64,000 nt of DNA, taken from Ostrea edulis. Taxonomy: Eukaryota. Where the stretch lies: NCBI RefSeq assembly GCF_947568905.1, contig NC_079166.1:92318001-92382000 (forward strand), in the 5' to 3' direction. The position numbers and the translations under genes were made by a program. How positions within the stretch are numbered: the first letter of the stretch is position 1; every line of letters begins with the position of its first letter. Of this stretch, positions 1,192 through 40,790 are shown piece by piece. The notes under the pieces were generated by a model that was not told the origin of the DNA, made no database searches, and saw nothing but the letters and a program-made list of their open reading frames with translations.

Positions 1192-2631
1192 CAGTGTGGA
1201 TAAAACTCGTGGTTTCTTTACTTATCTACAGTGTGGATAAAACTCGTGGTTTCTTTACTTATCTACAGTGTGGATAAAACTCGTGGTTTCTTTACTTATC
1301 TACAGTGTGGATAAAACTCGTGGTTTCTTTACTTATCTACAGTGTGGATAAAACTCGTGGTTTCTTTACTTATCTACAGTGTGGATAAAACTCGTGGTTT
1401 CTTTACTTATCTACAGTGTGGATAAAACTCGTGGTTTCTTTACTTATCTACAGTGTGGATAAAACTCGTGGTTTCTTTACTTATCTACAGTGTGGATAAA
1501 ACTCGTGGTTTCTTTACTTATCTACAGTGTGGATAAAACTCGTGGTTTCTTTACTTATCTACAGTGTGGATAAAACTCGTGGTTTCTTTACTTATCTACA
1601 GTGTGGATAAAACTCGTGGTTTCTTTACTTATCTACAGTGTGGATAAAACTCGTGGTTTCTTTACTTATCTACAGTGTGGATAAAACTCGTGGTTTCTTT
1701 ACTTATCTACAGTGTGGATAAAACTCGTGGTTTCTTTACTTATCTACAGTGTGGATAAAACTCGTGGTTTCTTTACTTATCTACAGTGTGGATAAAACTC
1801 GTGGTTTCTTTACTTATCTACAGTGTGGATAAAACTCGTGGTTTCTTTACTTATCTACAGTGTGGATAAAACTCGTGGTTTCTTTACTTATCTACAGTGT
1901 GGATAAAACTCGTGGTTTCTTTACTTATCTACAGTGTGGATAAAACTCGTGGTTTCTTTACTTATCTACAGTGTGGATAAAACTCGTGGTTTCTTTACTT
2001 ATCTACAGTGTGGATAAAACTCGTGGTTTCTTTACTTATCTACAGTGTGGATAAAACTCGTGGTTTCTTTACTTATCTACAGTGTGGATAAAACTCGTGG
2101 TTTCTTTACTTATCTACAGTGTGGATAAAACTCGTGGTTTCTTTACTTATCTACAGTGTGGATAAAACTCGTGGTTTCTTTACTTATCTACAGTGTGGAT
2201 AAAACTCGTGGTTTCTTTACTTATCTACAGTGTGGATAAAACTCGTGGTTTCTTTACTTATCTACAGTGTGGATAAAACTCGTGGTTTCTTTACTTATCT
2301 ACAGTGTGGATAAAACTCGTGGTTTCTTTACTTATCTACAGTGTGGATAAAACTCGTGGTTTCTTTACTTATCTACAGTGTGGATAAAGCTCGTGGTTTC
2401 TTTACTTATCTACAGTGTGGATAAAGCTCGTGGTTTCTTTACTTATCTACAGTGTGGATAAAGCTCGTGGTTTCTTTACTTATCTACAGTGTGGATAAAG
2501 CTCGTGGTTTCTTTACTTATCTACAGTGTGGATAAAGCTCGTGGTTTCTTTACTTATCTACAGTGTGGATAAAACTCGTGGTTTCTTTACTTATCTACAG
2601 TGTGGATAAAACTCGTGGTTTCTTTACTTAT
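1192..2631. repeat. 37-bp tandem minisatellite, about 39 copies
   Basis: Unit CAGTGTGGATAAAACTCGTGGTTTCTTTACTTATCTA, near-perfect. Five consecutive copies (~2385-2545) carry an A>G variant (ATAAAGCTCG). Confidence 0.97.
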
Positions 2632-2634
2632 TAT

Positions 2635-3371
2635 TGTTATTTATTGTAAAGCCCGTGTATGGTGTTATTTATTGTAAAGCCCGTGTATGGTGTTATTTAT
2701 TGTAAAGCCCGTGTATGGTGTTATTTATTGTAAAGCCCGTGTATGGTGTTATTTATTGTAAAGCCCGTGTATGGTGTTATTTATTGTAAAGCCCGTGTAT
2801 GGTGTTATTTATTGTAAAGCCCGTGTATGGTGTTATTTATTGTAAAGCCCGTGTATGGTGTTATTTATTGTAAAGCCCGTGTATGGTGTTATTTATTGTA
2901 AAGCCCGTGTATGGTGTTATTTATTGTAAAGCCCGTGTATGGTGTTATTTATTGTAAAGCCCGTGTATGGTGTTATTTATTGTAAAGCCCGTGTATGGTG
3001 TTATTTATTGTAAAGCCCGTGTATGGTGTTATTTATTGTAAAGCCCGTGTATGGTGTTATTTATTGTAAAGCCCGTGTATGGTGTTATTTATTGTAAAGC
3101 CCGTGTATGGTGTTATTTATTGTAAAGCCCGTGTATGGTGTTATTTATTGTAAAGCCCGTGTATGGTGTTATTTATTGTAAAGCCCGTGTATGGTGTTAT
3201 TTATTGTAAAGCCCGTGTATGGTGTTATTTATTGTAAAGCCCGTGTATGGTGTTATTTATTGTAAAGCCCGTGTATGGTGTTATTTATTGTAAAGCCCGT
3301 GTATGGTGTTATTTATTGTAAAGCCCGTGTATGGTGTTATTTATTGTAAAGCCCGTGTATGGTGTTATTTA
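2635..3371. repeat. 28-bp tandem minisatellite, about 26 copies, abutting the 37-bp array
   Basis: Unit TGTTATTTATTGTAAAGCCCGTGTATGG; GCCCG recurs at 2651, 2679 and onward. Confidence 0.97.
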
Positions 3372-3459
3372 GGCTCTTAAAAGTTTCAAAAGGTCATTTG
3401 TCTAGATGTTAGAATAGGGAACAAATATTTATCATAGTCTTAATCTCTTTTAGAAATTT

Positions 3460-5850
3460 ATGCAAGGACATCCCAGGATAAAAGGTCCACGCTTTGTACA
3501 TGATCGCATCGCTATTGTTGGAGCTGGCCCCGCAGGACTACACATGGCGTACGAGCTCAAGGTATGGTGACATATGTCATTAACACTTGCTTAAATAAAG
3601 CAGATTTATACATTGGCATCTTCAAAATATGAAGACATTTCATATAATCTGGTGCAAATTTTTACGTAATACACTGAAGGAAAAATGACGTGGGATGATT
3701 ACTCCTCCTAGACACCTGATCCCACTTCTGGTGTGTCCAGGGGTCCGTGTTTGTCTGATCCCACTTCTGGTGTGTCCAGGGGTCCGTGTTTGCCCAATCT
3801 TTTCTTTTGTATTCCTTATAGGAGTTATGAGATAGATCACTGTTCTTCATCTTCACGTTTCATGTTGGTATAATCGTAGATTATTTTCATATTGCTGTCT
3901 TTGTAGATTTTAATTGATCTATTTTGGTCGAGTATTATGTATTAATTAGGGTATTGAATGGCGACATGCTTTTACCTCTAAATAAATAACAAATGTACTG
4001 CAATCGACAATTAGTACAAGCTTAAAAGCTTGTGAAAAGGAATTTATTTGTTATAATTTCGATAATAGTTTGCATGTTATGAGTAACATTATGGTTTTTT
4101 TCTTCTAACAGAGGCGTGGTTTCCATAACATTGTAATCTTTGAAAGTCGACATGAGGTAGGCGGGAAAACAACATCGAGACTCTACAGGAACGTGTGGCA
4201 TGACCTCGGAACAATCAACTTAGCAGTCACCTATGATAAGACAGTAGCTCTACTGGAAAAATTCAACACAGGATTCGACATCATACCTAATCCTCCAAGT
4301 TCCATTTGGAACAATAGACACGGTAGGCGAATAATGAACAATAGACATGATATGCGAATAATGAACAATAGATACGGTAGGCGAATAATGAACAATAGAC
4401 ACGGTAGTCGAATAATGAACAATAGACACGGTAAGCAAATAATGTGCAAATAGATACGATGGACAGTGGTGATTTGAGTGTTGATTTGTTTTAAAGATAT
4501 CTCTAGACATTGGGGAAATGAAATGTTTGGTCTTCTCAAATGATAAAAGGAAAATTAAGTACAATCAATTTACATCCACGCGACCTACTCATTCATTCCT
4601 CAATTAAATATTACTTCAATGATACCGTGTTTTGAACTGACTTCAGTCATAGATCTATAATTCAATTTTAGTTGTAACACGCAATATGATTGGCTGACCA
4701 CACTGACAAAATTAGTTTATATTGTAAAATATAACTTACTATGGGGATGCGCCCCCTTGACAACCCAAAAATGGCACTACTTTGTTCAAATTGCACATTG
4801 TAGCACCGTCTATGAAGTAGAAAATCGCCTGAAGAAACAGTGCAGAATAAAATAAACTGCACCACGTTACATTATATCTTACAATAAAAGTCAACATTAG
4901 CTTCTTTCCTTAAATGCTGAAACAGTAGTCTTAGAACAATGATTTTGAGTACGGATTACTCCCTTTACCCGTTTATAAAGGGCTCACAGCGGATGTGACC
5001 AGTCGACAGGGAAAGTGTACTTCTCCTAGGCACTTGATCCCACCTCTGGTATATCCAGGGGTCCGTGTTTTCCCAACTCTCTATTTTCTATTGCTTATAA
5101 GAGTTATGAGATTGATCAATCTTCGTCATCTTCACCTTGCATATTTAAAGACAGTGTTATATCCAACTTATATTGTATAGGTCAAATTTAGTTATATGAA
5201 TGGTGAAGATAACGAATAATGATCAATCCCATAACTCCTATAAGCAATATGATTGATATGGGTTGAGGTAAAAAAAAAATATATTATACTTACATAAGGG
5301 TTAATGTTAAGAATTGCCGGACATATACCGATTAATCTTGAGAATTTGGGGACTAACATACAGATTAATGAGTCAAAGGTGGGATCGGGAGGAGTAAGCA
5401 TCCCCTGTCGACTGGTCACATCCGCCCTATATCTTGATTAAGATATATCGGACTCACAAACATAATATATCTTGAAACTTTCTATCAACACCAACTGTCG
5501 CGGTGGTCTCAAGGTGGAGCCTTCACCCCGCATGCAGAAGGTCGATGTTCGAATCCCGGCCGCAACAGACCTATGTCGTTAAAACAGGTAGTGAGAATTC
5601 CATCGCCAAACGCTCGGCATTAGATGTGAATTTCACGGGAGATGACATTAAAAACGAATGTTCCATGTCTCAGTAGGTGTGGCACGCTAAAGAATCTTCA
5701 ATGTTCGTAAGCGTCGAGCATAAACCTAAATGTGCAACCCTTCACCGTTATTGGTAACGTCTTCATATGAGTGCAACTTCCCGATAAACAAAATAAAATC
5801 AATCAAAATATATTGCTATTACACCGTTTCTGTTACGTCATAAAGTGGTT

Positions 5851-5896
<46 letters not shown>

Positions 5897-8800
5897 GTAC
5901 GTGGAATACTCGGTCGAACTTTAAGAGGTAGGATACAATTCAGGATTACATACATATCTTTACGATTCATTCGTGTTTCTATCAACTTATATAACTATTT
6001 TGAACAGTTTCCATTCTACAACGAATGTATCGGACAGGGATCGTGGTCTCTGGAACTCTACAAATGACATTTGCTTGAACTCACAAGCGCTTTGAAACGG
6101 ATCACACATCTACCTAAAATTTATGTAACCCCACCTCCTTACAGACGGAAACACAGGTGGTTATGGACGAACTTCCGGTTCCCTTCTTGTATTTTTGAAA
6201 GTTCAATTCCTTGGGTATTTCAGGATATCTTTGATAAACTATATAACTTCAGAGTGTGAGTGTATCTATTTCAATGAAATACACAAATGTCTCATGGGAA
6301 CCGTTGTTAAACATGGCATAGATACATGTATCAGCGATCATAATATATGAACAAAGTCTGCAACTCAGCCAGCTAATGGTAATCGGGTGATCTCGTCTCG
6401 GGTGTTCTATTTCTAAAAATAGTTGGCTGCAACAGAAATATCCCAGCATCACAACTTCCGTTCGTTGTAGCACGAAATGAATAGCGGCGCGATTAAAACG
6501 ATGAAATTGAACGGCGTGAAGTAAATATTGCGCACCAAATAGCGGTGGATTTAATCTATGATTCATCAGTAGATTTAGAGCGACCGTTCTTTTCGGTTAG
6601 TGAGTGTATTAATAGTGGGTTTTTTTTCAATTGGATTTCTCAGAGAGACGTATTTTTTTCCCCAAAATGTCGCTGGCTGGCTGAGTTGCATACCATTTTC
6701 ATATATTATGATCGTTGATATGACATTTTTAAAAACGGTTTCTATGTGACATTTGTGTATTCCTTCATTACAACTGCAGTTTTGTGTTTTGTAGAGTTTA
6801 ATTCCGCCTTTGAAGCTTTCTCAGTGTCGCTACCGAAGTTATTAGAGGCATCTGAGCGATATATTGCTTTACATAGATGTTTCTTTGGCACCTATGATGG
6901 AGAACTGATGCCTCGACCATCTCCAGATATTCTATACAGGGTAAGGCCATCATCACATATTTTGTAGTATAAGTAAGGCAATATGCTCAGATATTCTATA
7001 GCGGGTAAGGACCTCATCACATATTTTGTATAGTGTAAGTAAGACAATATTCTCAGATATTATATACAGAGTGAGGACATCATCACATATTCTGTATAGT
7101 GTAAGTAAGGCAATATTCTCAGATATTTTATACAGAGTGAGGACATCATCACATATTCTGTATAGTGTAAGTAAGGCAATATCTCCAGATATTATATACC
7201 GGGTAAGGACATCATCACATATTCTGTATAGTGTAAGTAAGGCAATATTCTCAGATTCTCTATACCGTGTAAGGACATCATCACATATTCTGTATAGTGT
7301 AGTAAGGCAATATTCTCATGTATGAAGGTTAGTATAGACTTTCACATATCACCAAATGTTCTGTGTAAGGTAGGGGGGACTGTAACATATTCTCAGATAC
7401 TGTAAACCAGCATTTATTGGCGATATACTTTTTCGCTATTTACTAGTGGTAAACTGGTACACTCCCACTACTTTTGGCGACCTAGATAATTTTGATTAAT
7501 AATATCCATTGTGTCGTTAACAAAAAATATTCGTTACGATCATATTCTTGTGAACCTCTCGAAAATTTCACACCCACCAATACAAGGTGGTATACAGTAT
7601 GTTGTATGTGTTGCAGATTCCAGGGCTCTGTGTTTGTACAATTCCCTATTTTGTATTGCTCATACGAGTTATGAGATCGATCAATGTTCGTTATCTTCAC
7701 CTTTATAGGAATTATGAGATCGATCACTCTTCGTTTTCTTCACCTTTATAGGATTTATGAGATCGATCACTATTCATTATCTTCACCTTTCATTATGAGA
7801 GATTTTGTATATGGTTAAGTATAGATTTATAATTTGTATATGGTAAGTAGCCATTTATAAAATTATATTATGAGATTTTTTGTGAAGGGTAAGTAAAGAT
7901 TCTCTTATATTCTATATAGGATAGAAATGTACTATCATATATTCTATATAGGATAGAAATGCAATCTTATATATTCTATATAGGATAAAAATGTACTCTC
8001 ATATGTTCTATATGGGTTGAAAATGTACTCTCATATATTCTATATAGGATAGAAATACACTCTCATATATTCTATCTAAGGTTCATAAGATTCATCACTG
8101 TTCGGCATCTTTTTCTTTATCTCTAAAAATATTACTCGCTATTCTACGTAGTTCGTATATTATAGGGTTTTTGAACGTATATTTTTTAATATTGGCCAAG
8201 TTGAATTGGGAATTAAAAAATCGTGATCTTGTGAGCATTTTTCAAATCGAACTTGGCAAATATTCAAATCAATATCAATACCTCATTGATTACGTATGCT
8301 AAACCACGTGTATATTCGTTGTTTTCTATTGATGATTCATTCATTTTCTCGTCGAGTTGGGAACTTTAGCAACGATTGATGTAATACTACAGTTACAGGC
8401 TTTTTCAACGCTCATCTAAATACATTGGTTAAAGTTGTTAAGTGTTTCGAATCGACAATAATATTTTCTGCTCCTTAATTGTAAATCACGATCGAAATAT
8501 CGAAGAATAGATGAAATATGGAGATCAGTTACCAGATTTAACAAATTGATAGCTGATTCGAAGTTTGTCTGATAGCAGGGGACAGTTTCACTCTATACGC
8601 CCGTACAACATTCTTAGAAAATTAAAATATGCCATATTTAAAGTGATATTGTATGCGTACAGAAAATTGGTGATTTTCTAATTTCCCACTGGCTATTTTA
8701 TCCTCAGACACTGAGACACGTAATACAATAGTGTTTTCCTGCAGTTTGGGTGCTTGTGTGACAGTTGGTAATCAACCTTTCAATATCGGTGTACTTAAGA

Positions 8801-9956
8801 ATAACACAAAGGAAAACAACTATTGGGAAACTCGAATATTTGCATATTGCGGTTTTTCGGGTATTTACAGTGCGGGATTTTAAGCCTCAGCAAAGCCCCG
8901 ACACTAGATCTAAAGATATGTAATGTGTGTTATTTATATTTTCTTTAACGGCTCGGGTTTCTTTCAATACTCACAGTTCTTTGATCAGTATCTTGTTTTC
9001 TCCCTTAGGTCCGTGGTACCATTGATGATTTTCTCGTAAGATACAACCTCACAGACCTACGACCGTTATTTTTCATTGGTTTTGTAGTGAATGCGTACGG
9101 TTCCCTGAATGAGACATCGGCGCTGTATGCATTAACATTTGTACCCCCAGCAGTGGTTCGGTCCTTTCTAAGACCTGACAGGGGACTTTACCGTCTCCGC
9201 GGTGGCTGGCAAAATCTATGTCGTGAAATATCTAGACGAATAAACGTCGAAATTAGATTCAATGTGAATATAAAACACATTCACAGAGAAAACGGAATTC
9301 GAATATTGTTCCAAGAAAAACATTTCCCTTCACTGCATGTGGATAATTTTGATTTTCTTATTCTTTCTCCATCAATGAATTCCTTATTCGGTATTATGGA
9401 TTTCAATCCACGTGAATTAGCAATATTTACACACTTGCGAAATTTATATTTCTTGAAGTCGATTGTTAATTCCATCAGTCCTGGTAGAAGAGCTCTTTAC
9501 CCACGCGAAGTGTTTCTATATGATTTACAACGTGAGCAATACTCTGTTTATGTATCTATCAATCCGCATCAAGTCGAAAATAATGTGACTGGCCTTGACT
9601 ATCAGCGAGGGCGACGGGAAAACACCGATAGAGATGGCAGTACGTATGAAACAAGTGTATATCATCAGTTTGGGAAAGCTAATCCTTGGAAGAGAGACGT
9701 AAATTCTGACATTCAAAGAAATCTTTTTCAACATCTAAAAGATTTCAACAAAGGCAATCCGGAATTAGTCGAGCAAGTGACGTGGTCATATTACTTTCCA
9801 AATTTCCCACCGGAAGCTATAACTGAGGGTGCATTGTGGGATGTTTTAGATATGCAAGGAATGTATAACACATGGTACATAGGATCATCTGTATCTTTTG
9901 AGTCAATAGAAAGTGTCTTTGAGTATAATCATTTATTGATGAAACTGTTTTTCTGA
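3460..9956 (+). CDS. FAD-dependent oxidoreductase (flavin amine oxidase fold) resembling polyunsaturated fatty acid isomerase PAI; 468 aa
   Basis: Exons 3460-3561, 4112-4322, 6795-6940, 9009-9956; all GT-AG with phases 0/1/0; 1407 nt open. Motifs: RIAIVGAGPAGLHMAYELK (Rossmann GxGxxG), IFESRHEVGGK...HDLG, and C-terminal WSYYFP...MQGMYNTWYIGSSVSFES..LLMKLFF. Confidence 0.9.
3692..3863 (+). mobile_element. 3' UTR/tail copy of a Naiad-type Penelope-like element with an internal ~39-bp duplication
   Basis: Matches the 3' UTR that follows the RT ORF at 50485 (CTCCTAGGCACCTGATCCCAC...GAGATTGATCACTGTTCGTTATCTTCACCTT). Confidence 0.85.
4308..4440 (+). repeat. 27-bp tandem repeat (5 copies) spanning the exon 2 splice donor
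   Basis: Unit GAACAATAGACACGGTAGGCGAATAAT; donor position recurs at 4323, 4350 (mutated), 4377, 4404, 4431. Confidence 0.95.
4963..5446. mobile_element. Two Penelope-like 3' tails in tail-to-tail inverted arrangement (+ 4963-5141, - 5196-5446)
   Basis: Both match the 50486-50703 tail, in opposite orientations about 55 bp apart. Confidence 0.8.
5497..5810 (+). mobile_element. tRNA-headed SINE (Meta/Deu-domain type of bivalves)
   Basis: A-box-like GGTGGTCTCAAGGTGG, B box GTTCGAATCCC, body AAAACAGGTAGTGA...CGCCAAACGCTCGGCA, tail ending AAACAAAATAAAATCAATCAA. Related pieces at 990-1050, 16650-16736 and 53376-53715. Family name is from recall. Confidence 0.75.
5853..5893. repeat. (CT)n microsatellite
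   Basis: Direct reading. Other microsatellites: (CT)n ~16050-16095, (TA)n ~21467-21529 and ~40744-40787. Confidence 0.97.
6920..7322 (+). repeat. ~66-bp tandem repeat (about 6 copies) spanning the exon 3 splice donor
   Basis: Unit like TCAGATATTCTATACAGGGTAAGGACATCATCACATATTCTGTATAGTGTAAGTAAGGCAATATTC; translates as a 22-aa repeat in ORF 7026-7325. Confidence 0.92.
7620..7793 (+). mobile_element. Penelope-like 3' tail with its terminal ~42 bp triplicated
   Basis: TTATGAGATCGATCAmTnTTCrTTwTCTTCACCTTT occurs three times in tandem. Confidence 0.8.
7895..8075. repeat. ~33-bp degenerate tandem repeat (about 5 copies)
   Basis: Recurrent CTCTCATATATTCTATATAGGATAGAAATGTA. Confidence 0.8.
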
Positions 9957-10850
9957 ATACAAACTCGTGTAAACGATACGTAAGAATATTGAAAATGCCA
10001 GAATTATGATTTTATTCTGTTGGTGTTGATTTTCTTTTGAAATATATGTCGCATTGTTTTCATTCAGTAATGGTACATGGCATTGTATGTTCTTTTGATG
10101 ACTGAGAATAATAAATGATTCATAGTTTGCACAATGAATGCCATTGAAGTGATAATGAAATAGAGCTTGAATACTGTAAGCTTTTTAAAATGTTAATGCA
10201 TATTCCTATTGTTGTAGAGAAAGAAGAGCTAGATTCTGACCAAATTTACTGTTTTCTGAAGTTTTGGAAATTTGTTTGGTTTGCTTTTTATACTGTTTAA
10301 CGGTGATGGACAAATGAAGGACACTATCTGTAGCCAGTTTGATGTCACAGGCAATTATCATAATCATTGGATAGTAAATATACATTTTGATATGTGTATG
10401 TTAACGTCCATGATTGACTTATCGTTGTCCTATCGACAGGGGATACTTACTCCAACTCTGGTATATCAAGGGGTCCGTGTTTTCCCAACTCTCTATTTTG
10501 TATTCCTTAATTCATGCAGTTTTACTTAAAGATTTATCTTGAGAAAGCCTACAAATGAACATTTTTCATGTTTCACATTAATATGAAACTCCTTCTCAAA
10601 GTCATAGCAAAACCCTTACATTCCACAGAGTTGTAAGGATGAAATATACCGGGGATAGTTCTCTATCAGCGTGAACCAAGACAGAGTTACATGTCCCATT
10701 ATCCAATGATAATATAATATATCGTATTATATGGTTATTAAAAAATTGGCAGCTTATGAGCGAATTTTCACCAACGAGCGAATATCGGTATTCCCTTATG
10801 TTTGTTCTATATCCCCTTTATTCTACAGCTGAACGATTTTAAAAGCAAAA

Positions 10851-12650
10851 CATGAAAGGTGAAGATAACTCCTATAGGCAATACAAACTAGAGAGTTAAA
10901 CATGGACCCCTGCATATACCAGAGGTGGAATCAGGTGCCTAGGAGTACACATCCGCTGTCGACCTGTCACACCCGCCGTGAGCCCTATATCTTTATCAGA
11001 TAAACGGAGTTATTCGTATTCAAAATCAGTGTGCCAAGAACAGTCCAACAGTCGGTATGAAACACGTCAGACAGCATTTGACCCAATGGTAGGTTACATT
11101 GGCAAACTAGATCGTTATAACGACCATAGAATTTGCAAAATGTTTACTTTAAACAAGACTGTTGAAACCCTTGTATCATCAAGTTGTTTGTCAATAGATT
11201 GCCTCGATTTAAAAACTGATCATAGGCAAAGCAATCTCTTGCGTATGAAAGGTGAAGATAATGAATAGCGATCAATCTCATAACTCCCACACACAATACG
11301 GAAACAGCAAACCAGATCGCCATAACGACCACAGTCTGCGAAATGCTGACCCCAAACGACACTGCCGGAACCCCCGTACCACCAACTCACCTACCAGCAA
11401 CCTGTCTGGACTCAAGAACTGACCATAGCAGAACACGCCTCCGCTCATTGAATCAGCTGAGAGACACACAAACACCATACGAAGGTGATAATGGAACATT
11501 ACCACACAAATATGAGAAGTTGACAATGGAGAAGCCAAAACCATCCCGGGATGTTTGTCACAAATTTGAGCTGCCAGTTTGCCATTGATATCTACCCTCA
11601 ATCAATTGAGAGATATAAACACCATATGCAGGTGATAGTGGAATATTGCTACATAGATATGGGAAGTTGACGATGGAGAAGCTGAAATAATCCTGTTTGT
11701 CATCAAGTGGAGTTATTAGTTTGCCGTTAATATCTACTTTCAATGAAATATTTAAGTGATAAGTAGAAGTTGACGACTCTGTGGTGTCTTTTATTTGGAG
11801 TTCACAGGGATATATCCAATCGATATATGAATGAAAGTCTTTATTGTTAATAGATAAATAAAACGTCGTCGATATACTGTAAACGTATTATATTTGGCGT
11901 GTACGATATTTGGCGGAAATCGTTTTTTCAACAAGTTAGCGTAGATTTGATTTAGCGCATTCCTGAATTACTTTAAACATCTAAATTTACGGATGGCATT
12001 TAGCGATGTACTTGATTTAGCGGAAGCTGCGTTCCGCCAAAGTCGCTAAATAGAATACACAGCCAAATGTAATCTATTTACAGTATTTAAATGTCGAATT
12101 GAAGGCAACAACAAGAATTTTTTCTACTCACATAGAGGTTTTTGAATAAATTCTGCTTCATATAAATATAAAAACAGATCAGCTAATAAAGGAGCACAAT
12201 TCGTGCCCATGTTAATTCCAACAGATTGTTGGAAGACCTGATCATTAAATACCACGAAGATATTGTCAATGAAGAACTCTAGCATATTTCTTATTTCAAT
12301 TTCAGACTATTTGTGCGTGGAGTCAGAGTGGTGTTTAACAAAATGATTTTTTGGATGACTGATCACTAGATATGAATATTTCCGTTTTCCACTTTTGTTG
12401 AAAAAGCAACTGTCTATGATGTCAAAAAGTCTAATCTTTAATTCATCGTGAGGAATGGTCATGCATAGTGTTGAAAAGTCATACGTTTTGATGTTGTTGA
12501 TTTGAGAAAAGTTTTGCGATTTAAAGTTTACTAAAAGTTCTTTAGATTTTTTTAGAATCCACATTTGATTTACACCACTTCTGGCATATGTAGTGGTACA
12601 GTAAGTTTGAAGTTTCTCCTTCACAACTGTTAATATTACGAAACGCATGG
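10851..12650 (-). mobile_element. Rearranged Naiad-type Penelope-like retroelement with decayed reverse transcriptase
   Basis: Minus-strand RT motifs: KTYDFSTL..TIPH, GINMGTNCAPLLADLFL, FNSTFKYIDDV (split by a MITE), and a duplicated FSIVNFPYLCSNIPLSPAYGVYISQL, followed by the same 3' UTR as at 50486. Confidence 0.88.
11877..12083. mobile_element. ~207-bp MITE with TA target duplication
   Basis: TA|CTGTAAA ... TTTACAG|TA; removing it restores the RT YIDD motif on the minus strand. Confidence 0.85.
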
Positions 12651-14878
12651 ACTATAAAACGATAATCAGTTATGTCCAAGTAGAACGACAGGGAAGAATC
12701 ATGATCAAACGACTATAATTTTATACAACTTAATGTCATGAAGAAACATAGGTCAGGTGTTATCATAGAAATAATTGCCATGAATTACACCTATGTATCA
12801 TTGTCTATGGAACAGAACATTGTACGACCTATCTAATTCCCATATGATCTGCATATATTGACACGTTTATCTTTATGTGACATCATTGTACAATGACTGT
12901 GCATGAACATACCCCCGCAAGGCACAATCACGATAAGTGATGGACGTATTGGCATGGTAATACCTATGTCTTCTCAGACCTTTTTGCACAGGATATAATT
13001 TTGGGACACAAATTCACTCACTCGCTACAAATTCACATATTCTACAACATTAAAATCTCCAGGAGTCCGCTTGACAATCTAGTACATAAGTTCTGACCAC
13101 ACCAGCTCACATTGTAATCATGTGTTCAGCTTTGCCTTCATTTTCTTGCATGTGCCTATGTTCGTAATCGACTCTGGGTTGGGATATGTCCGAAATCTGT
13201 ATATGAATGGCGGCGGTGTGGGTAAGACAGGGCTCGTGGTTACTGTAATGTGACGTGCATTTTTATTTTCATATTCAATTTCGTCGTTTTGAACTTTTAG
13301 AAATGAAATATATGAAAAAAAATATGAGATGAAACAAGGAATAATTTCATTAAAATGATTAGCATAAAAAAATTCACCATTCGGGGATCCTGATGCAGAA
13401 TAATGCAATGAAAATAATCACAAATATTGAAAATATTTTGCAAAATCAAGGAAACAAAACAAATTGAGAGCCCGGTAATCAGTTACGCAGAGCTTTCAAT
13501 TCTACCACGGTTATTGCGAGATCAAAGGAATGCCGTATGCATTCTTTTCCAATACACAATACATGATCAAAAGATCATCAGAACATTTATACATATCAAA
13601 CTTCCACAACATAGATAAAGGTATAGGTGTGAAACGTAATTGCGATTTACTCCATGTGGATTTCACTTCCTTGACCTGATTAGACGCTGTGCGTTGTGTT
13701 AAAACATCTGTATGATATGACTCTTCCACGATACCCCCTACTGTTTTTATTCTTCGTCTTTTGCTAAACAAGAATGGAATCGATAACTGATAAATTTAAT
13801 TTCATAACCGTAAAAATCAAATCAATATGAAAAGTGAAGGTAATGCACAGTGATCAATCTCATAACTCCTACAAGCAATACAAAATAGATAGTTGGACAA
13901 ACACGGACCCCTAAACACACCAGAGGTGGGATCAGGTGCCTATGTGGTAAACTTTATGAATGAGATACAAATACCTGTCATTCAATATACGTCAATCGCC
14001 TGCATTCCGAGATCGATACACAATTAAACGAACATGTAAGATAAGTTAACTCTCGTACAGGTATGTGTAGTTTAGTTGGACTGTGTCATCAGAGCAGGTG
14101 ATACAATCCATCAACATTAAATAAATGCTTGATTTTTTTAAAGAGGTACCCTACTATTTCACCTTTTTCGTCAGCAAAAACAAAAACCCTGACACATGTG
14201 AAATGCATTGCGTTTCGGAAGCTGCAATGACGTCACATAACTGTATAGGTAAACGATCGGCTGTATATTTGTGAGTCGTAGTAGAATAGAAACAAAGTTC
14301 TTTTCGAAGATGATGCAGGGTACCCTAGACTTTTATATTTCAAAATAACATATCTCGACCTCAAAGGTTATCCTGCACCATCTACGAAAACACGTACTTT
14401 CTTCCTTAAAATAATTAAAGCAAGTTTTTAGAAGACTGTTATATATCTTGTAAAGTCGAAGAAAATTTGAAATCATTATACGGTCCAGTATATGTATAAT
14501 TCGGTTATAAGAGGCTGTAGAAAATCACAGAATTTCTCCTAGTTGATAAGCCTATATGCAGTGCTAAATATAGTTACTTCTATGGGTCAACTACATGAAA
14601 GGTGAAGATAACGATAACGTATAATATATCGTAATATATGGTTATCAAACTTATATTGATGAATATCAGCCGGTTAAAAAATTTGGCAGCTTATGAGCGA
14701 ATTTTCACCAACGAACCAATATCGGTATTCCCTTATGTGAGTCCTATATCCCCTTTAATCTAACGATTTTAAAAGCAAAACATGAAAGGTGAAGATAACG
14801 AACAGTGATCAATCTCATAACTCCTATAAGCAATACACATTAGAGAGTTGGGCAAATACGGACCCCTGGACACATATA

Positions 14879-29652: not shown

Positions 29653-32600
29653 ATCAAACTTTTGTATACATGTATATCACGAATTAGCTCCTCGAAGATC
29701 ATAACTATAAAGTAATATGATAAATGAAAAGATGAAGGTACCGAACAGTGATCAATCTCGTCATTCCTATACAGAATACAAAATTAGGAGTAAAACAAAC
29801 ATCAACCCAGGAAACACCTATGGTCGGATCATGTGCCTTGTTGGAATACGTAATACCCTGTCGACCGATCAAACCCACCTTGAATCCCATATATTGATCA
29901 GATTAAAATATATTCCATTTCACGACAAGTCCAAGGATCATATCTAAACCACTAATCGTTGCAAATGAACTGAACAAGCTTATCATACTGTTTATCAAGT
30001 CAGGTTTATCTCAGAGATAACAGGGTAAAACAGGAAATGTTCTTCCACAGAATGTTGAAGAAATGAACTTAAAATTGTCTACACATATAACGAAATTTGA
30101 AGTTCTTGAAAAGGAGACAGAAAGAGTGGAAACTGAAAGAGACATATTGTCTTCTAAAGACTTGGAAGATCTTACACTTGAAAATGATTTAATGAGTAAT
30201 TCAGTTGCAAAGAAAAGAAGAGAAAAAGATTTTTTTTGTTTCCGAAATTACCAAGATCAAAGCAACTAATCAAAGCCTAGGCATGTCAGTAAGTGATGCT
30301 GAGACAGAAGTAGAAAAATTAAAGACTGAGTTACAAGAGAACACTATTGTCCAAGACGAAAGTGAAAACTTGTTACAGCAAAGCTTGACAGAATCCAAAT
30401 CTCAGTTTGAAGATAATGTGAAGTTGAATGAGATGTTTTCAATTCTACAGTCAGAGCTAATCACCACTAAAACAGAAAATCAAGATAAAGAAAAACAACG
30501 CTCATTTCTTACTGAAAGCACATTATTTCTAGAGACTGAATTAAAAAACCTAGAATCAACAGAAATTGAACTGAGAGATAAGTTAAAGACATTTCAAGAC
30601 GAAATAGATGCCAGACTAGTTTTAGTGGAAGAAAAGCTGATTTCTCTAAATGACAAAAAGAAAACATTAATCGACAAGAAAGACCCATTTATAGACAAGC
30701 TGTCTCTGACAGAATCACAAATGTGTGTTCTGCAGGCTGAAGTTGAGGATTTACAGATGCAGAATGTTGTTGAAAAAGAACTTGTATTGAAACATATCAA
30801 AGAACTTCATTGCACAAGTGACAGGCTGCGACATTTGGAAGAAAGTGCCTGTGCTTTAGAATATTCTTTTAAGAACCAACGTAGTTTGCTTCAGACAAAA
30901 GAGGAAACAATTGTAGAACTTAATGAATCAAAAACAATATCAGAAACACAAATGGTGAATTTTCTGAAAGAATTACAAGATATGAAGTCAGAGCATGCAG
31001 AAAAAATTAATAATTCAGAAATTCTAATAAACTCTCTGATGTCTGATATCAACTGTCTAAGGGAGGGAAAAGAGAGGTTGGATAATCAGAACCAGGCTCT
31101 AACGAGCAATTTCCAATCTCAAGTTGAAAAAAATAGAGAACTACAAAAGAAAGTATAGCAACGTGATCAAGAAATCACTGTCTTGATGGAACATTCTCAA
31201 GAACTAGAAAACCGTTGCTTTGAGATAACTGAAGTTATTACGAAAGTGAGATCGGATGAGAATAAGAACAAATAAAAAAAAAAAACATGATGAAATGGTT
31301 AAAAGAACACTAAAATAAAATGCCCTGAGGGAGATCTTAAGAAACTAATGCTCGACTTGGAAAGTAAAGATAAACAACTAGATAAGATCAATTCAGATTT
31401 AGTATCAACAAATGAAGCTTGTAGAAGTACAACAGATAGATTGCAACAAACATGCAATAACATGCGAGGAAAATACATCAACGAGCAAAACAGATGTAGT
31501 GAATTTCAAACTAGAGTAACAGAGGTAGAGACTGAGGTAAAGACCAAGGATGTACTCATAGAAGAGTTAAGACAGTTACACAAACAAAACCGACTTGAAA
31601 TTGACACTGAAGAAGGTAAATGAAGAAGTTAATGTCCTGGAAAATGAATTAAAGCAACAGAAAATTAATTATCATCAAATGGTTTCTGAAAAAGAACAGG
31701 AGAAGGGCATCAATGTTGCGCTGTTCAAAGTATTAGAAGAAGAAATTGAAATGCTGAATGAAACTAACCAAAAGCATAGAATGATTATAACAAAACTGCA
31801 GGTGCATAGTAAGACAAAGTCTAAAGAAATCCATGATTTAGAAATGATGATAAAGAAATTAGATATGAATTTAGAGAGTAAAATCAGAATAGAGGTGGAA
31901 AATGGAAAAGAAGATACGGCAAATGCAAAGGAGAAACTGAGGAAAGACATTCTAGAATGTAAAGAAATGCTACAGGATAGGGATGTTAAGCTGTCGGAAT
32001 TAGAATTTAAATGTAATGAGTTGAATAAAAGCAACCAAGAGCTTGAATGCAATTATTCTTCTTTGGAATGTAACATGAAAGATGCAGAAGAAATGCGTAT
32101 TAAAGAAATACAATCCATGGAGGAAAGGTTAAAAAATTCATCCAGGGATTTTGAAGACATGTCTGAAAAGAATAGAATGCTAAATGAAGAGTTATTGTGT
32201 GCTAAACAGGAGTGCCAGTCTCTTAGTGTAGAGATGGATAGTCTTCAATTGAAGCTTGACACTTTTATACACGAGAAGAATGAGCTTTTACAAGAAAATA
32301 ATGATTTAGAAGTGTCGAACAGAGAATTGATCAAGGCAAGAGAAGAATTGACATCAGTCCAAGAAGATTTCGAGAATTTAGTGGGAGAAAAAACGATGTT
32401 GATGAAGGAATTGAAAGAATTGCAGACCAAACTTGTGACTGAAACAGAACTTCTCAACAAAGATGTTGAAGAAAAAGAAGTGTCTTTATCAACTTTAAAT
32501 CGTCCGGTGGAATCATTAACTCTAATCAATACTGAACTAGAAAATGAGACTTTGTGCTTGAAAGATGCGGTAAACGAATTGCAAAGTGCGAGTAAGAGAA

Positions 32601-35600
32601 ATGAAGAACTTAGCATTGCGTTTAAAACAAAAGAAGATGTGTTTGATCAAAAAATTGAAATGCTGATACTACAGAATGAAGATTACGTTGAAAAATTCCA
32701 AGATTTAGATTCCTTGCTTATGAATGAAAGCCAGAAGAATACTGGTCTTAAAAATCAACTCCAAGAAAGCATAATAAAACTGAATTATATGGAGTTGTTT
32801 AGAAAAGGAATATGCTGAATTGAAAATATGTTTTCAAGAAAAGAATGATCAGTACGAGAATTGTCTGAATAAGGCAGGGGCTGTCGAGTCAGATATTCTG
32901 CACATGAATGCCATCATGGGAAAAATGAAGGAGGACATGTCTTATAAAGTAACATCCATTGAAGAACTCACAAAGTAAAATGAAATGTTGAAGCAAGACA
33001 ATTTTAGAGGAAAAGAAAAGCAGAGAAATGATAGATTGCAATGTGAAGAATTTGAATTGATGTTAGAAAAGAACAACACGGCTTTGGATGCTTGTTTGAA
33101 GTGGTTGAAATCATTGTTCAAAGAGCTAACACTAGGCACAGATGACGCTGAAGAAACAACTTACATTGATGGATGGATTGGATTAGTTAACACAGAGATC
33201 TTGACATTGAAAAGAAATCTTCTTTTAAATATATCAGAAGAAAACACCTCCCTTCTTAAACAAATAGAAGCCAAATCAAGAAAGCTGAATCGTGTTGAAG
33301 AAGAATTGAAACAAGGAAGATGTGAGGTCGAAACTGTGAACAGTAAACATTATTTAATGCTATCAGAATATGAGGAGCTGCAACAAGCATTGCTCAGTAT
33401 AAATACTAATAGTGGGATTACTTTGACAACAAACAAGAAAATGAAGGAGGAGATGAATGATCAACAAGCAAAACTTCAGAAGCTAACTGAAGCTAACGAG
33501 GTTTTGGAACATCGGTGTGACGGTTACGAACAGGGATTAAGGAAGTTGTTACAAACAACAGAACACAGTTCACTCGAGTTTTCAGATGAATTCTATGGAA
33601 GAGATGGAAACGTTTCAATGCTTGAAAAACTTGAGGAGTTTATAAGCTCAATGAAAGGAAGTATGCTCAAGCTGGATAAGGAGAAAACAACGCTGGAAGA
33701 TGAGCTACAGAAAGCAGATAGTACCCTGAAAGATGTGACACTATCTCATGAATAATTGACACATAAAGCCACAGACACAGGGACTCGTTAAAAGCTGATA
33801 TTACAGACGAAAGAGAAAGTAGATTTAGAACTTTCAAAATGCGAAAGTGAGTATTCCGCATTGAGAGAGCCGTTCCATGCATTGACGGATGCAAACGAGG
33901 CTCTGAAATTTCAGGTAACGTACATATGTTTTGAACTAAGAGAATATGAAAGTAGAGCCGTCATGATGTGTTTTAGCATTGACAGTAATTATTCATTTTC
34001 GCTTGTTTTGAGCCTTTGGCATTATTTTATTTCTATGACGTGTATTTTCCAAATCAAGATGACAAATTTCGAAAGATGTTCTATCAGAAATCTTTAGGAA
34101 TCTATTAGTATGAAACAATGAAATATAACATCTCCCAATTATTTTTTCAGTACTTTGTTGCCAATTTGCAACAACAATTCATCAATGTATTTTGGAGAAT
34201 TTCTTTAAAGGACTGGTTTAAAGGGATTGGTTTCATTCTACACTTTGTATTATTTCTAGTTGGACAGTTTTAGTGGAAACTCTGATTTGGGGTTAAGGTA
34301 TATTTAAAGATCGAGTATCAAGACACCAGTACTAGTTTTTAAATGCCAAAATTAAAGTTTCATTGCTCTGATCCCCCCTTACCAAATTCCTTCAAAAGAA
34401 TTGTCATAAACTCTTCACCTACATGTGTACATGTTACACAAAGAAATGACATTTTGGCAGTAAATCCTGTTCAGACTTGTCATCCTTGTCCTAAAAAAGT
34501 TGCAATTAAAGGAAAAGTAGCTGATAACGTTAATAGTAAAGTATAAATATGAGTTATATAAATATACGAGTAAGTAAGAAGGATTCCATCAGGATTTAGT
34601 CTCTTCACGTCATGTTTTTAGAGCCAAATTTATTCCTATTGACTTTGAACATATGGATACTGATGACAATGAGAACGTACAGTTATGGCCAGATCACTCT
34701 ACATGTGATTGAAAAAAGGAGATTTGTAGTGCATTGAGTTTTGTTAGTTAGTATAGTTAGGATAATTTCTGTGCTAAATTCGACCTTAAGGATATGGGGC
34801 ATTGTTTTATGTTAACAAAACTGCTTTCCTATTTATTTTTGAGGCTTCATTCGTACTTATCGTCTCAAATCATTTTCATTTAGCTACATGAAAAAGAAAA
34901 TATAATACTGGACCTCCGAAGAGACTCTAAAGAAGCGATGGACCAAAACGATCAGAAAATAAGTGATTTGTTGTCGGTACAAGAAAACCTAATTAGGCAA
35001 AAGTAAGATATTACGATTAAACTTGAAAAAGTTCTAAGAGAGTTGTGTGAGTTGCAAAGGGAATTCAAGGTGCAAAATGGTAAGAATGTTAAACTGAGGA
35101 ATTCTATTGAAGAAAAAGAGAATCGCTTACTACAACACAAAGTGGAATCAAAGGAGTATGAATCTAGAATAGTTAAACTCCAACAGGAGTTAGAAATTCA
35201 GAGAAGCTCACACAAACCGCTGACTGAAAAACCATTGAGTAGTGCAGAGGATAGGAACACAGACTTCGAAAAACTTTATGGTGAAATTAAGAAACTTCAG
35301 AAACTTTGTAAAGAAAAGGCTGCCAAGATATCTAAAATGACACAAGAAATGAACAACCAAGACCTGGGGGACAGAAAGGCTTTTGAAAATAAAGTAGAGA
35401 AATTGGAAACAACGTTAAAAGAGGTTATTGACGAAAGAGAAAGTATGTGAATTGAAAATCAAAAGTTGCAGAAAATGTATAAAGGCAGGGAAGTGAAACT
35501 AAAGAAATTGGACGAAATAGTAACATAACAGGAGAAACTGCTGAGTCAGTACGAAGCAGATAAACTTATCTTAAGCGAAAGTGTGAATGAACTGAATGAA

Positions 35601-40738: not shown

Positions 40739-40790
<52 letters not shown>

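What the first reader, a model, noticed from the sequence alone, without database searches (positions are those of the whole stretch)
3460..9956. Intact, spliced animal homolog of the bacterial polyunsaturated fatty acid isomerase (PAI) type flavoenzyme
Both ends of the protein resemble Cutibacterium (Propionibacterium) acnes PAI as I recall it. N-terminus: RIAIIGAGPAGL..GFH..ILE...VGGK. C-terminus: W.YFP...MQG..NT.Y.G...SF.......LV..FF. PAI is an FAD-dependent isomerase that makes conjugated linoleic acid. No such activity is established in molluscs to my knowledge, although bivalves are known for unusual fatty acids. Three phase-consistent introns and an open 468-aa frame argue for a real host gene, not contamination. 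The function is inference.
Basis: partly seen in the sequence, partly recalled or inferred. Interest (0 to 1): 0.7.

Follow-up and report, generated by a model that had tools for sequence, protein, structure and literature searches.

The report
Oyster PAI/PFI-family flavoenzyme gene
This is a real, intact four-exon gene of the flat oyster for an FAD enzyme whose closest solved relative is the bacterial fatty-acid double-bond isomerase PAI; related genes in other bivalves and cnidarians are already labelled "polyenoic fatty acid isomerase-like", and no animal member has been assayed.

Summary
Exons 3460-3561, 4112-4322, 6795-6940 and 9009-9956 (+ strand, all GT-AG) give a 468-aa frame identical to RefSeq XP_048765263.2, an "uncharacterized protein" of Ostrea edulis.

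PAI (PDB 2b9w) is the best solved relative by a wide margin:
- Single protein: E 1.4e-20 against 6e-8 for the next hit.
- Family profile: E 6e-62 over the full length, against 9e-18 for others, which match only the FAD-binding N-terminus.

The gene is not a recent bacterial import. It sits in a clade that holds all the named animal sequences (bivalves and cnidarians), far from the bacterial clade. NCBI already names several relatives "polyenoic fatty acid isomerase-like", after the red-alga enzyme PFI.

dN/dS against Crassostrea gigas is about 0.07. C. gigas mRNA contigs show isoforms with and without a signal peptide. Two further copies, 98-99.5% identical in DNA, lie 0.56 and 1.19 Mb away.

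The function is inferred, not shown. PAI residues R88 and F168 (numbering recalled from memory) are not conserved.

Verdict: a new member of a known but unstudied kind, of moderate interest.

The parts
3452..3459 (+). AG acceptor-like site (3452-3453) followed by in-frame Lys-Phe directly before the ATG. This suggests that 'exon 1' is an internal exon preceded by an upstream exon that I did not find.
   Evidence: The sequence is ...TCTCTTTTAG|AAATTTATG. The C. gigas orthologue mRNA contig L004 joins a signal-peptide exon at the equivalent point (...KKEF-MQGYP). No matching exon was found within 10 kb upstream.
3460..3561 (+). Coding exon 1 (34 codons). It holds the start Met and the FAD dinucleotide-binding beta1-GxGxxG motif (GAGPAG at 3520-3537).
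   Evidence: GT donor at 3562. G21, G23 and G26 are invariant in 37 family members.
3562..4111 (+). Intron 1 (phase 0, GT-AG). It contains a high-copy repeat at about 3700-3900.
   Evidence: DNA contig depth is 10^5-10^6 in the 3700-3899 bin.
4112..4322 (+). Coding exon 2 (211 nt). It holds Glu45, which ends beta2 (4142-4144), and the EVGGK 'GG' FAD motif (4154-4168).
   Evidence: Pfam NAD_binding_8 E 4.3e-12 and Amino_oxidase E 7.5e-12, both above the gathering score.
4309..4444 (+). 27-bp tandem repeat (x5) that starts inside exon 2 and repeats the exon-2 splice donor into intron 2.
   Evidence: The reading frame stays open through the array. This repeat is the subject of the separate finding s1-271647.
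4323..6794 (+). Intron 2 (phase 1, GT-AG), with high-copy repeats at about 4900-5700.
6795..6940 (+). Coding exon 3 (146 nt), which encodes the helical part that includes the conserved ...ELMPRPSP... stretch.
   Evidence: In one search, a 151-nt contig of run X1 (possibly RNA, 95.6% alike) stops at 6939 with 37 letters unplaced. That would fit a spliced transcript of a close relative, but the evidence is weak.
6924..7318 (+). 66-bp tandem repeat (x6) that starts in the last codons of exon 3 and repeats the exon-3 donor into intron 3.
6941..9008 (+). Intron 3 (phase 0, GT-AG).
9009..9956 (+). Coding exon 4 (315 codons plus stop). It encodes the substrate-domain core, the GYG-type loop (VNAYG), and the C-terminal family motif YYFP...DMQG..NTWYIGSS (9789-9890).
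   Evidence: This exon alone finds PAI at E 2.9e-9.

Best explanation
The stretch 3460-9956 is a functional four-exon nuclear gene of Ostrea edulis (LOC125673045). It encodes a 468-aa FAD-binding enzyme of the PAI/PFI branch of the flavin amine-oxidase fold. I put that part at about 0.95. The branch has two characterised members known to me. One is Cutibacterium acnes PAI, which converts linoleate to t10,c12-conjugated linoleate. The other is Ptilota filicina PFI, which converts arachidonate and EPA to conjugated trienes.

By analogy, the most likely chemistry is as follows. A polyunsaturated acyl chain enters a hydrophobic channel that ends at the flavin. FAD removes a hydrogen from a bis-allylic carbon and returns it at a shifted position. 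The result is a conjugated diene or triene with no net redox change. I put this isomerase function at about 0.4-0.5. It is inferred, not shown.

The C. gigas orthologue is spliced into one form with an N-terminal signal peptide and one without. The enzyme may therefore work both in the secretory pathway or outside the cell and in the cytosol. For the O. edulis copy only the form without a signal peptide can be read from the DNA at hand.
For: Gene reality.
- The GT-AG model is identical to XP_048765263.2, and the locus is identical to the chromosome record.
- dN/dS against C. gigas is about 0.07 (pN/pS 0.26) over 468 codons.
- C. gigas RNA-type contigs carry uninterrupted 509-aa and 468-aa ORFs.

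FAD binding.
- The GxGxxG motif, Glu45 and the GG motif are invariant in 37 relatives.
- The Pfam families Amino_oxidase and NAD_binding_8 score above their cut-offs.

Specific kinship with PAI.
- phmmer gives PAI 1.4e-20 against 6.4e-8 for the next hit.
- The C. gigas orthologue gives 3.2e-19 against 4.8e-8.
- The family profile gives 6.1e-62 across PAI residues 4-423. The next hit is 9.2e-18 and covers only the N-terminal FAD motif.
- The AlphaFold model has pLDDT 91.6 and pTM 0.92.
- Foldseek gives 2b9w E 8.8e-31 against 3.4e-22.

Kinship with PFI.
- Sources name relatives in C. virginica, Pecten, Mizuhopecten and Actinia 'polyenoic fatty acid isomerase(-like)'.
- The nearest ESM Atlas structure cluster carries the same name and is mostly Mollusca (TM 0.86).

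Other points.
- PAI F193 aligns with a Phe in the window protein (F206), and the GYG loop is conserved.
- PAI's use of FAD for isomerisation without net redox is summarised in PMC13076199.
- PFI's conjugated-triene chemistry is summarised in PMC7700177.
Against: - No activity was measured, and no animal member of the family has been characterised in the literature I could search.
- Identity to PAI is only 21%.
- PAI R88 aligns with Ser98, which is S/T/A/N across the family. PAI F168 aligns with Asn181, which is Q/N across the family. I recall R88 as part of the carboxylate gate, but the roles of these residues come from memory, because the PAI papers are not held.
- The family is large, with 1101 clusters at E below 1e-30, so two characterised members are a thin basis.
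- I could not obtain the Ptilota PFI sequence, so the link to PFI rests on the names given by the sources.
- Transcription of this exact O. edulis copy was not shown. The runs that hold it are DNA.
- I know of no reports of conjugated fatty acids in oysters (own knowledge).
Confidence: 0.5

Rival explanations
1. The fold and family are the same, but the chemistry differs. On this reading the protein is an O2-reactive flavin oxidase, dehydrogenase or cyclase acting on another hydrophobic or amine substrate. It might be a secreted H2O2-producing defence enzyme, in the manner of molluscan L-amino-acid oxidases, and not a fatty-acid isomerase.
For: - CpaO shows that a PAI-like scaffold can be an oxidase.
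- PAI R88 and F168 are not conserved.
- Many family members, including the C. gigas orthologue isoform, have signal-peptide-like N-termini.
- The gene has undergone recent multi-copy expansion, and differences between copies are mostly amino-acid changing: 9 nonsynonymous against 2 synonymous codon differences. This pattern is common in defence genes.
- The second-best sequence hits are L-amino-acid oxidases.
Against: - Full-length sequence and structure similarity is far stronger to PAI than to any oxidase.
- Unlike CpaO, all three domains superpose on PAI (412 of 423 residues at 2.5 Å).
- PFI, the only characterised enzyme the sources name the relatives after, is an isomerase that by my recollection is also made with a signal peptide. 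A secreted form therefore does not argue for an oxidase.
Confidence: 0.3
2. This particular copy is a redundant, recently duplicated gene drifting neutrally. It would then be a pseudogene in waiting or a poorly expressed copy, and the family's function would be carried by other paralogues.
For: - Three copies are 98.4-99.5% identical in DNA, introns included.
- Between copies there are 9 nonsynonymous and 2 synonymous codon differences.
- An allele or copy with 11 bases missing in exon 1 at 3478 appears in one DNA run.
- No RNA run was found to hold the exon.
- No signal-peptide exon was found upstream.
Against: - All three copies keep an open 468-codon frame. Every splice site is intact in the window and in L002. 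The mapped exon-2 donor of L003 reads AT, which may be a mapping slip at the repeat.
- All FAD motifs are intact.
- Long-term dN/dS is about 0.07.
- There are too few differences between the copies to estimate dN/dS.
Confidence: 0.08
3. The gene is bacterial contamination or a recent horizontal transfer of a bacterial PAI gene into the oyster.
For: The closest solved structure is bacterial, and the feature-based ESM Atlas neighbours are bacterial clusters.
Against: - The gene has three spliceosomal introns with oyster repeats inside them.
- It lies on a 98-Mb chromosome record.
- In the tree rooted on bacteria, all named animal sequences form one clade (SH-aLRT 100) and the bivalves form one clade (98). 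The bacterial clade (Halomicronema, Nostoc, Muriicola, Clostridia and others) is far away.
Confidence: 0.02

Closest known systems
[quoted passage not shown]
   Different: Identity is only 21%. PAI R88 aligns with Ser and PAI F168 with Asn. PAI's 'AGE' near the C-terminus is 'GSS' here. The oyster gene is eukaryotic and has introns. Its orthologue has a signal-peptide isoform, whereas PAI is a cytosolic bacterial protein. Activity is untested.
[quoted passage not shown] 1994, Zheng et al. 2002, cited in PMC7700177)
   Same: PFI is a eukaryotic marine enzyme. By my recollection it is a flavoprotein of about 500 aa made with a signal peptide. Sources name the bivalve and cnidarian relatives of the window protein after it. 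The C. gigas orthologue isoform of 509 aa has a signal-peptide-like N-terminus.
   Different: I could not retrieve the PFI sequence, so identity and tree position relative to PFI were not measured here. The O. edulis model lacks a signal peptide. RefSeq calls the O. edulis protein only 'uncharacterized'.
'Polyenoic fatty acid isomerase-like' proteins of Crassostrea virginica, Pecten maximus, Mizuhopecten yessoensis and Actinia tenebrosa, plus unnamed kin in Saccostrea, C. gigas, Argopecten, Ylistrum, Dendronephthya, Clytia and Actinostola
   Same: These belong to the same family. They are 31-69% identical to the window protein over 94-100% of its length. In the tree they form one clade with it (SH-aLRT 100), and the bivalves form one clade (98).
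   Different: The window protein belongs to oyster subclade A, together with C. gigas LOC105335871. The C. virginica protein that carries the PFI-like name is in subclade B and is 48% identical. None of these proteins has been characterised.
CpaO, FAD-dependent oxidase/cyclase of alpha-cyclopiazonic acid biosynthesis (PDB 9kp8)
   Different: Identity is 15%. There is no detectable full-length sequence similarity. It catalyses oxidative cyclisation of an indole alkaloid. It is fungal and forms a separate subfamily.
Flavin amine oxidases proper (L-amino-acid oxidases, MAO, putrescine/polyamine oxidases, LSD1) and protoporphyrinogen oxidase
   Same: They share the same superfamily fold and the same Pfam family, PF01593.

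Membership tests
Flavin amine-oxidase / GR2-type FAD fold (Pfam PF01593 with PF13450) | N-terminal beta-alpha-beta dinucleotide-binding motif: GxGxxG, an acidic residue at the end of beta2, and the GG motif | tested here: met
   GAGPAG lies at 3520-3537, Glu45 at 4142-4144 and EVGGK at 4154-4168. These positions are invariant in 37 relatives.
Flavin amine-oxidase / GR2-type FAD fold (Pfam PF01593 with PF13450) | Pfam score above the curated cut-off | tested here: met
   Amino_oxidase scores 45.7 bits against a cut-off of 19.8. NAD_binding_8 scores 46.6 bits against 21.9.
PAI/PFI-type fatty-acid double-bond isomerases | Full-length sequence homology to PAI that exceeds homology to other flavin amine oxidase subfamilies | tested here: met
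   P0020 gives 1.4e-20 against 6.4e-8. The family profile gives 6.1e-62 over PAI residues 4-423, against 9.2e-18 for the N-terminus only.
PAI/PFI-type fatty-acid double-bond isomerases | Three-domain architecture that superposes on PAI | tested here: met
PAI/PFI-type fatty-acid double-bond isomerases | PAI channel-entrance and active-site residues R88, F193 and F168 (roles recalled from Liavonchanka et al. 2006 and 2009, which are not held here) | tested here: not met
   By HMMER alignment, R88 aligns with Ser98 (S/T/A/N in the family), F168 with Asn181 (Q/N in the family) and F193 with Phe206 (variable hydrophobic in the family). Only one of the three is kept. The alignment around R88 is in a loop and is uncertain. 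A conserved Arg145 (R/K in 31 of 37) could serve instead, but that is speculation.
PAI/PFI-type fatty-acid double-bond isomerases | Conversion of a methylene-interrupted PUFA into a conjugated diene or triene without net redox | not testable with these tools
   This needs recombinant enzyme and UV or GC-MS assays.
Ptilota PFI (EC 5.3.3.13) orthology | Measured sequence similarity to the Ptilota filicina PFI protein | not tested
   The PFI sequence was not among the hits listed, and it could not be fetched. The link rests on names given by NCBI and UniRef to relatives and on the name of an ESM Atlas cluster.
Ptilota PFI (EC 5.3.3.13) orthology | N-terminal signal peptide (PFI being a secreted or glycosylated protein is my recollection) | tested here: inconclusive
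   The O. edulis model starts at MQGHPRIKGP with no hydrophobic leader. The C. gigas orthologue has a 509-aa isoform with a hydrophobic leader on mRNA contig L004. In the window, an AG acceptor lies directly before the ATG. No homologous upstream exon was found within 10 kb.
Classical amine / L-amino-acid oxidases | Closest overall sequence and structure relationship to MAO, LAAO or PAO enzymes | tested here: not met
   These are clearly weaker matches than PAI. The catalytic Lys and aromatic-cage positions were not examined.

The most novel reading that the evidence does not exclude
Bivalves and cnidarians keep an old, repeatedly duplicated clade of PFI-like flavoenzymes that isomerise dietary or membrane PUFA such as arachidonate and EPA into conjugated polyenoic fatty acids. 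Such products have not been described as animal-made lipids. Alternative splicing of a 5' exon switches the enzyme between a secreted form and a cytosolic form. This would amount to an unrecognised lipid-signal or chemical-defence pathway in marine invertebrates.
Probability: 0.3. Interest if true: 0.6.

Novelty: new member of a known kind. Interest (0 to 1): 0.4.

Why it matters
FAD-dependent double-bond isomerases that make conjugated fatty acids are known to me from one bacterium (PAI) and one red alga (PFI).

This work shows that oysters, scallops, sea anemones, soft corals and hydrozoans carry a conserved, intron-bearing and sometimes multi-copy branch of the same family, and that it is under purifying selection. 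That makes a concrete question testable with an ordinary expression and assay experiment: do marine invertebrates make conjugated polyenes themselves?

Such enzymes also interest people who want regio-specific conjugated linoleic acid or conjugated EPA biocatalysts.

The find is tempered in two ways. Databases already carry the 'PFI-like' label for relatives, so the homology itself is not new. And the chemistry in animals is still only inferred.

Tried and rejected
- **Second paralogue in the window.** tblastn with 13 family members found only the four exons. A weak hit at 62959-63249 (E 0.08) is chance.
- **Upstream signal-peptide exon.** Smith-Waterman with C. gigas leaders against 3.4 kb of the window and against 10 kb of L001 gave only chance-level matches. 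The FMSILVFHI match at L001 4525 runs into a stop. A heuristic scan gave two weak AT-rich candidates that I do not trust.
- **PAI primary papers.** They are not held, so the PAI residue roles are from memory.
- **Ptilota PFI sequence.** It was not among the listed hits of either alignment search or of the exhaustive profile search.
- **The search for related loci with the broad alignment A2.** The narrower bacterial alignment A5 worked, but Cutibacterium was not among the 80 loci returned.
- **Reads.** The three runs that hold the exon well are DNA, because their contigs cover the introns evenly. Splicing in O. edulis was therefore not shown.
- **Fusarium FgLAI12 (PMC5384231).** I checked it as a possible third characterised relative. 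The paper does not state its protein family, so I did not use it.
- **NCBIfam.** Only N-terminal FAD-motif hits appeared, all far below their cut-offs.
- **Literature.** Searches by locus names and for oyster or invertebrate fatty acid isomerases found nothing relevant.
- **Contamination and recent HGT.** Both were rejected on the introns and the tree.
Full report
**Observation**

On the + strand the region holds four open segments that match one protein family. Splicing 3460-3561, 4112-4322, 6795-6940 and 9009-9956 uses GT...AG at all three introns, which are in phases 0, 1 and 0. It gives 1407 nt, which is 468 codons plus a stop.

The product is identical, residue for residue, to P0020. That is XP_048765263.2, 'uncharacterized protein LOC125673045' of Ostrea edulis. 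The locus fetched for that protein (L001, record OX387706.1 near 92.32 Mb) is identical to the window wherever they overlap. The window contains no N.

**The motifs are real matches, not recollection artefacts**

HMMER aligns the last exon alone to PDB 2b9w as its top hit (E 2.9e-9). The alignment includes ...W.YYFP...MQG..NT.Y.G..SF...FF. 2b9w is deposited as 'putative aminooxidase', and its entry title is 'CLA-producing fatty acid isomerase from P. acnes'. The N-terminal RIAIVGAGPAGL...GFH..I.E....VGGK is present in the window and aligns to PAI residues 6-45 in the orthologue.

**Which family it belongs to**

Pfam places the protein only in the broad Amino_oxidase and NAD_binding_8 families. 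NCBIfam gives nothing above its cut-offs. Three finer tests all single out PAI.

- Sequence, single protein. P0020 gives PAI 1.4e-20 against 6.4e-8 for the next PDB sequence. The C. gigas orthologue gives 3.2e-19 against 4.8e-8.
- Sequence, family profile. A profile of 37 relatives (A2) gives PAI 6.1e-62 (213 bits), aligned across PAI residues 4-423. The next best hit is 9.2e-18, and all later hits align only to profile positions up to about 146, which is the FAD-binding N-terminus.

That did not happen.

**The immediate relatives are eukaryotic and already carry a name**

Word-based and profile searches return oyster orthologues and paralogues from C. gigas, C. angulata, two Saccostrea species and C. 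virginica. They also return scallop proteins (Pecten, Mizuhopecten, Argopecten, Ylistrum) and cnidarian proteins (Actinia, Actinostola, Dendronephthya, Clytia). Several of these are named by NCBI or UniRef 'polyenoic fatty acid isomerase-like' or 'Polyenoic fatty acid isomerase'. [quoted passage not shown]

The nearest structure cluster in the ESM Atlas is named the same. It has 60 members and is mostly Mollusca (TM 0.86).

The exhaustive profile search finds 1101 cluster representatives at E below 1e-30, so the family is large.

A maximum-likelihood tree of 67 sequences was built with IQ-TREE (LG+C20, quick search) and rooted on a bacterial clade whose members I identified from genomes. These include Halomicronema, Nostoc, Muriicola, Cytophagales, Nitrospinota, Myxococcota, Clostridia, Actinomycetota and Hyphomonas. 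The tree puts all named animal sequences in one clade (SH-aLRT 100). Within that clade all bivalves form one clade (98). The oysters split into subclade A (the window protein and C. gigas LOC105335871) and subclade B (the C. virginica 'PFI-like' protein) (the 158-row FastTree agrees).

This pattern fits vertical descent in animals with many losses. It does not fit a recent bacterial transfer. The root and the identity of the unnamed rows are not established.

I could not obtain the Ptilota PFI sequence itself. The PFI link therefore rests on the sources' names and was not measured here.

**A working host gene**

Against a C. gigas mRNA-type contig (L005), Nei-Gojobori gives dN 0.22 and pN/pS 0.26. 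dS is saturated, so dN/dS is about 0.07 over 468 aligned codons without gaps.

Logan contigs from four runs carry uninterrupted ORFs of the C. gigas orthologue. One (L004, 509 aa) starts with a hydrophobic signal-peptide-like leader joined directly to ...KEF-MQGYPRIKGP. Three (L005-L007) carry, at the same junction, about 50 extra nucleotides that begin with GTAAAG and contain a stop. Translation would then restart at the Met that corresponds to window position 3460. Alternative 5' splicing thus appears to switch the signal peptide on and off in C. gigas.

In the window an AG acceptor lies directly before an in-frame Lys-Phe-Met, which suggests the same arrangement. However, no homologous upstream exon was found in 10 kb. 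The 2.2 kb just upstream are two perfect minisatellites.

Transcription of the O. edulis copy itself was not shown. The runs that hold the exon well are DNA. One possible RNA contig from a close relative stops at the exon-3 donor, which is weak evidence.

**Copies**

The same chromosome record holds two more loci, 0.56 and 1.19 Mb away. They are 99.5% and 98.4% identical in DNA over about 9 kb or more, introns and flanks included. Both have open 468-codon frames.

RefSeq's 440-aa model for LOC130053007 merely starts at an internal Met. Its exon 1 is intact.

Between the window copy and the third copy, 9 codons differ nonsynonymously and 2 synonymously. That is too few to interpret.

**Mechanism, and how far the analogy carries**

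- Shown: the FAD-binding motifs are intact and invariant across the family, and the whole PAI architecture is predicted.
- Inferred: the protein binds FAD, admits a long hydrophobic chain, and shifts double bonds as PAI and PFI do. In PAI, FAD promotes the isomerisation of linoleate without net redox change (summary in PMC13076199).
- Against a simple transfer of function: PAI R88 aligns with Ser98 and PAI F168 with Asn181. These positions are S/T/A/N and Q/N respectively across the family. F193 aligns with Phe206 in the window protein but is only 'hydrophobic' across the family. The roles of these PAI residues are from my memory of Liavonchanka et al., whose papers are not held.

I therefore put family membership at about 0.95 and PUFA isomerase chemistry at about 0.4-0.5. 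The main rival is an oxidase or other redox reaction on a different substrate (about 0.3).

**Novelty**

No paper in the searchable library deals with an animal PFI/PAI-type enzyme. The homology is nevertheless already visible in public annotation of related species. This is a new, correctly recognised member of a known but unstudied kind.

No gap letters were sought.

Noticed in passing
window 1192-2631 and 2635-3371: Two long, almost perfect minisatellites lie directly upstream of the first coding exon: 37 bp x 38.9 at 99% and 28 bp x 26.3 at 100%. The same arrays occur upstream of both paralogous copies (L002, L003) with different copy numbers.
   Followed up: partly
window 4309-4444 and 6924-7318: Both exon 2 and exon 3 end inside tandem repeats (27 bp x5 and 66 bp x6), and each repeat carries the splice donor into the intron. 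The 27-bp array stays in frame with exon 2, so use of a later donor would add 9-aa units. Having two such donor-multiplying repeats in one gene is unusual. The first is the subject of finding s1-271647.
   Followed up: partly
L002 (OX387706.1 92.88 Mb) and L003 (93.51 Mb) compared with window 3287-12956: Segmental duplicates of the whole locus lie 0.56 and 1.19 Mb away. They are 99.5% and 98.4% identical in DNA, introns included. All three copies are intact. The full extent of the duplicated blocks was not measured.
   Followed up: partly
window 3478 (exon 1): In DNA run X5 the only contig covering this place lacks 11 bases. That would shift the frame from the first ATG and leave only the internal Met29 start, which has no GxGxxG. 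It could be an allele or one of the paralogous copies. All three DNA runs read C instead of T at 3494 (F12S), as do copies L002 and L003.
   Followed up: no
L004 compared with L005-L007 (C. gigas transcript contigs), 5' ends: Inclusion of about 50 nt after the signal-peptide exon introduces a stop. The same gene therefore yields a 509-aa form with a leader and a 468-aa form without one. Three of the four contigs are the form without the leader.
   Followed up: partly
window about 3700-3900, 4900-5700 and 7500-7900 (introns): These are very high-copy interspersed repeats. Summed contig depth is 10^4-10^6, against about 10^2 for the flanking sequence, and many false joints form between them. The element family was not identified.
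   Followed up: no
window 30205-46411 (+): A run of long open frames lies on the + strand in a region with strong G>C and A>T skew. Pfam gives only weak coiled-coil-type hits (TPR_MLP1_2, CC149, GAS, CENP-F). This is probably a large coiled-coil protein gene or a repeat-rich exon array, unrelated to the finding.
   Followed up: partly
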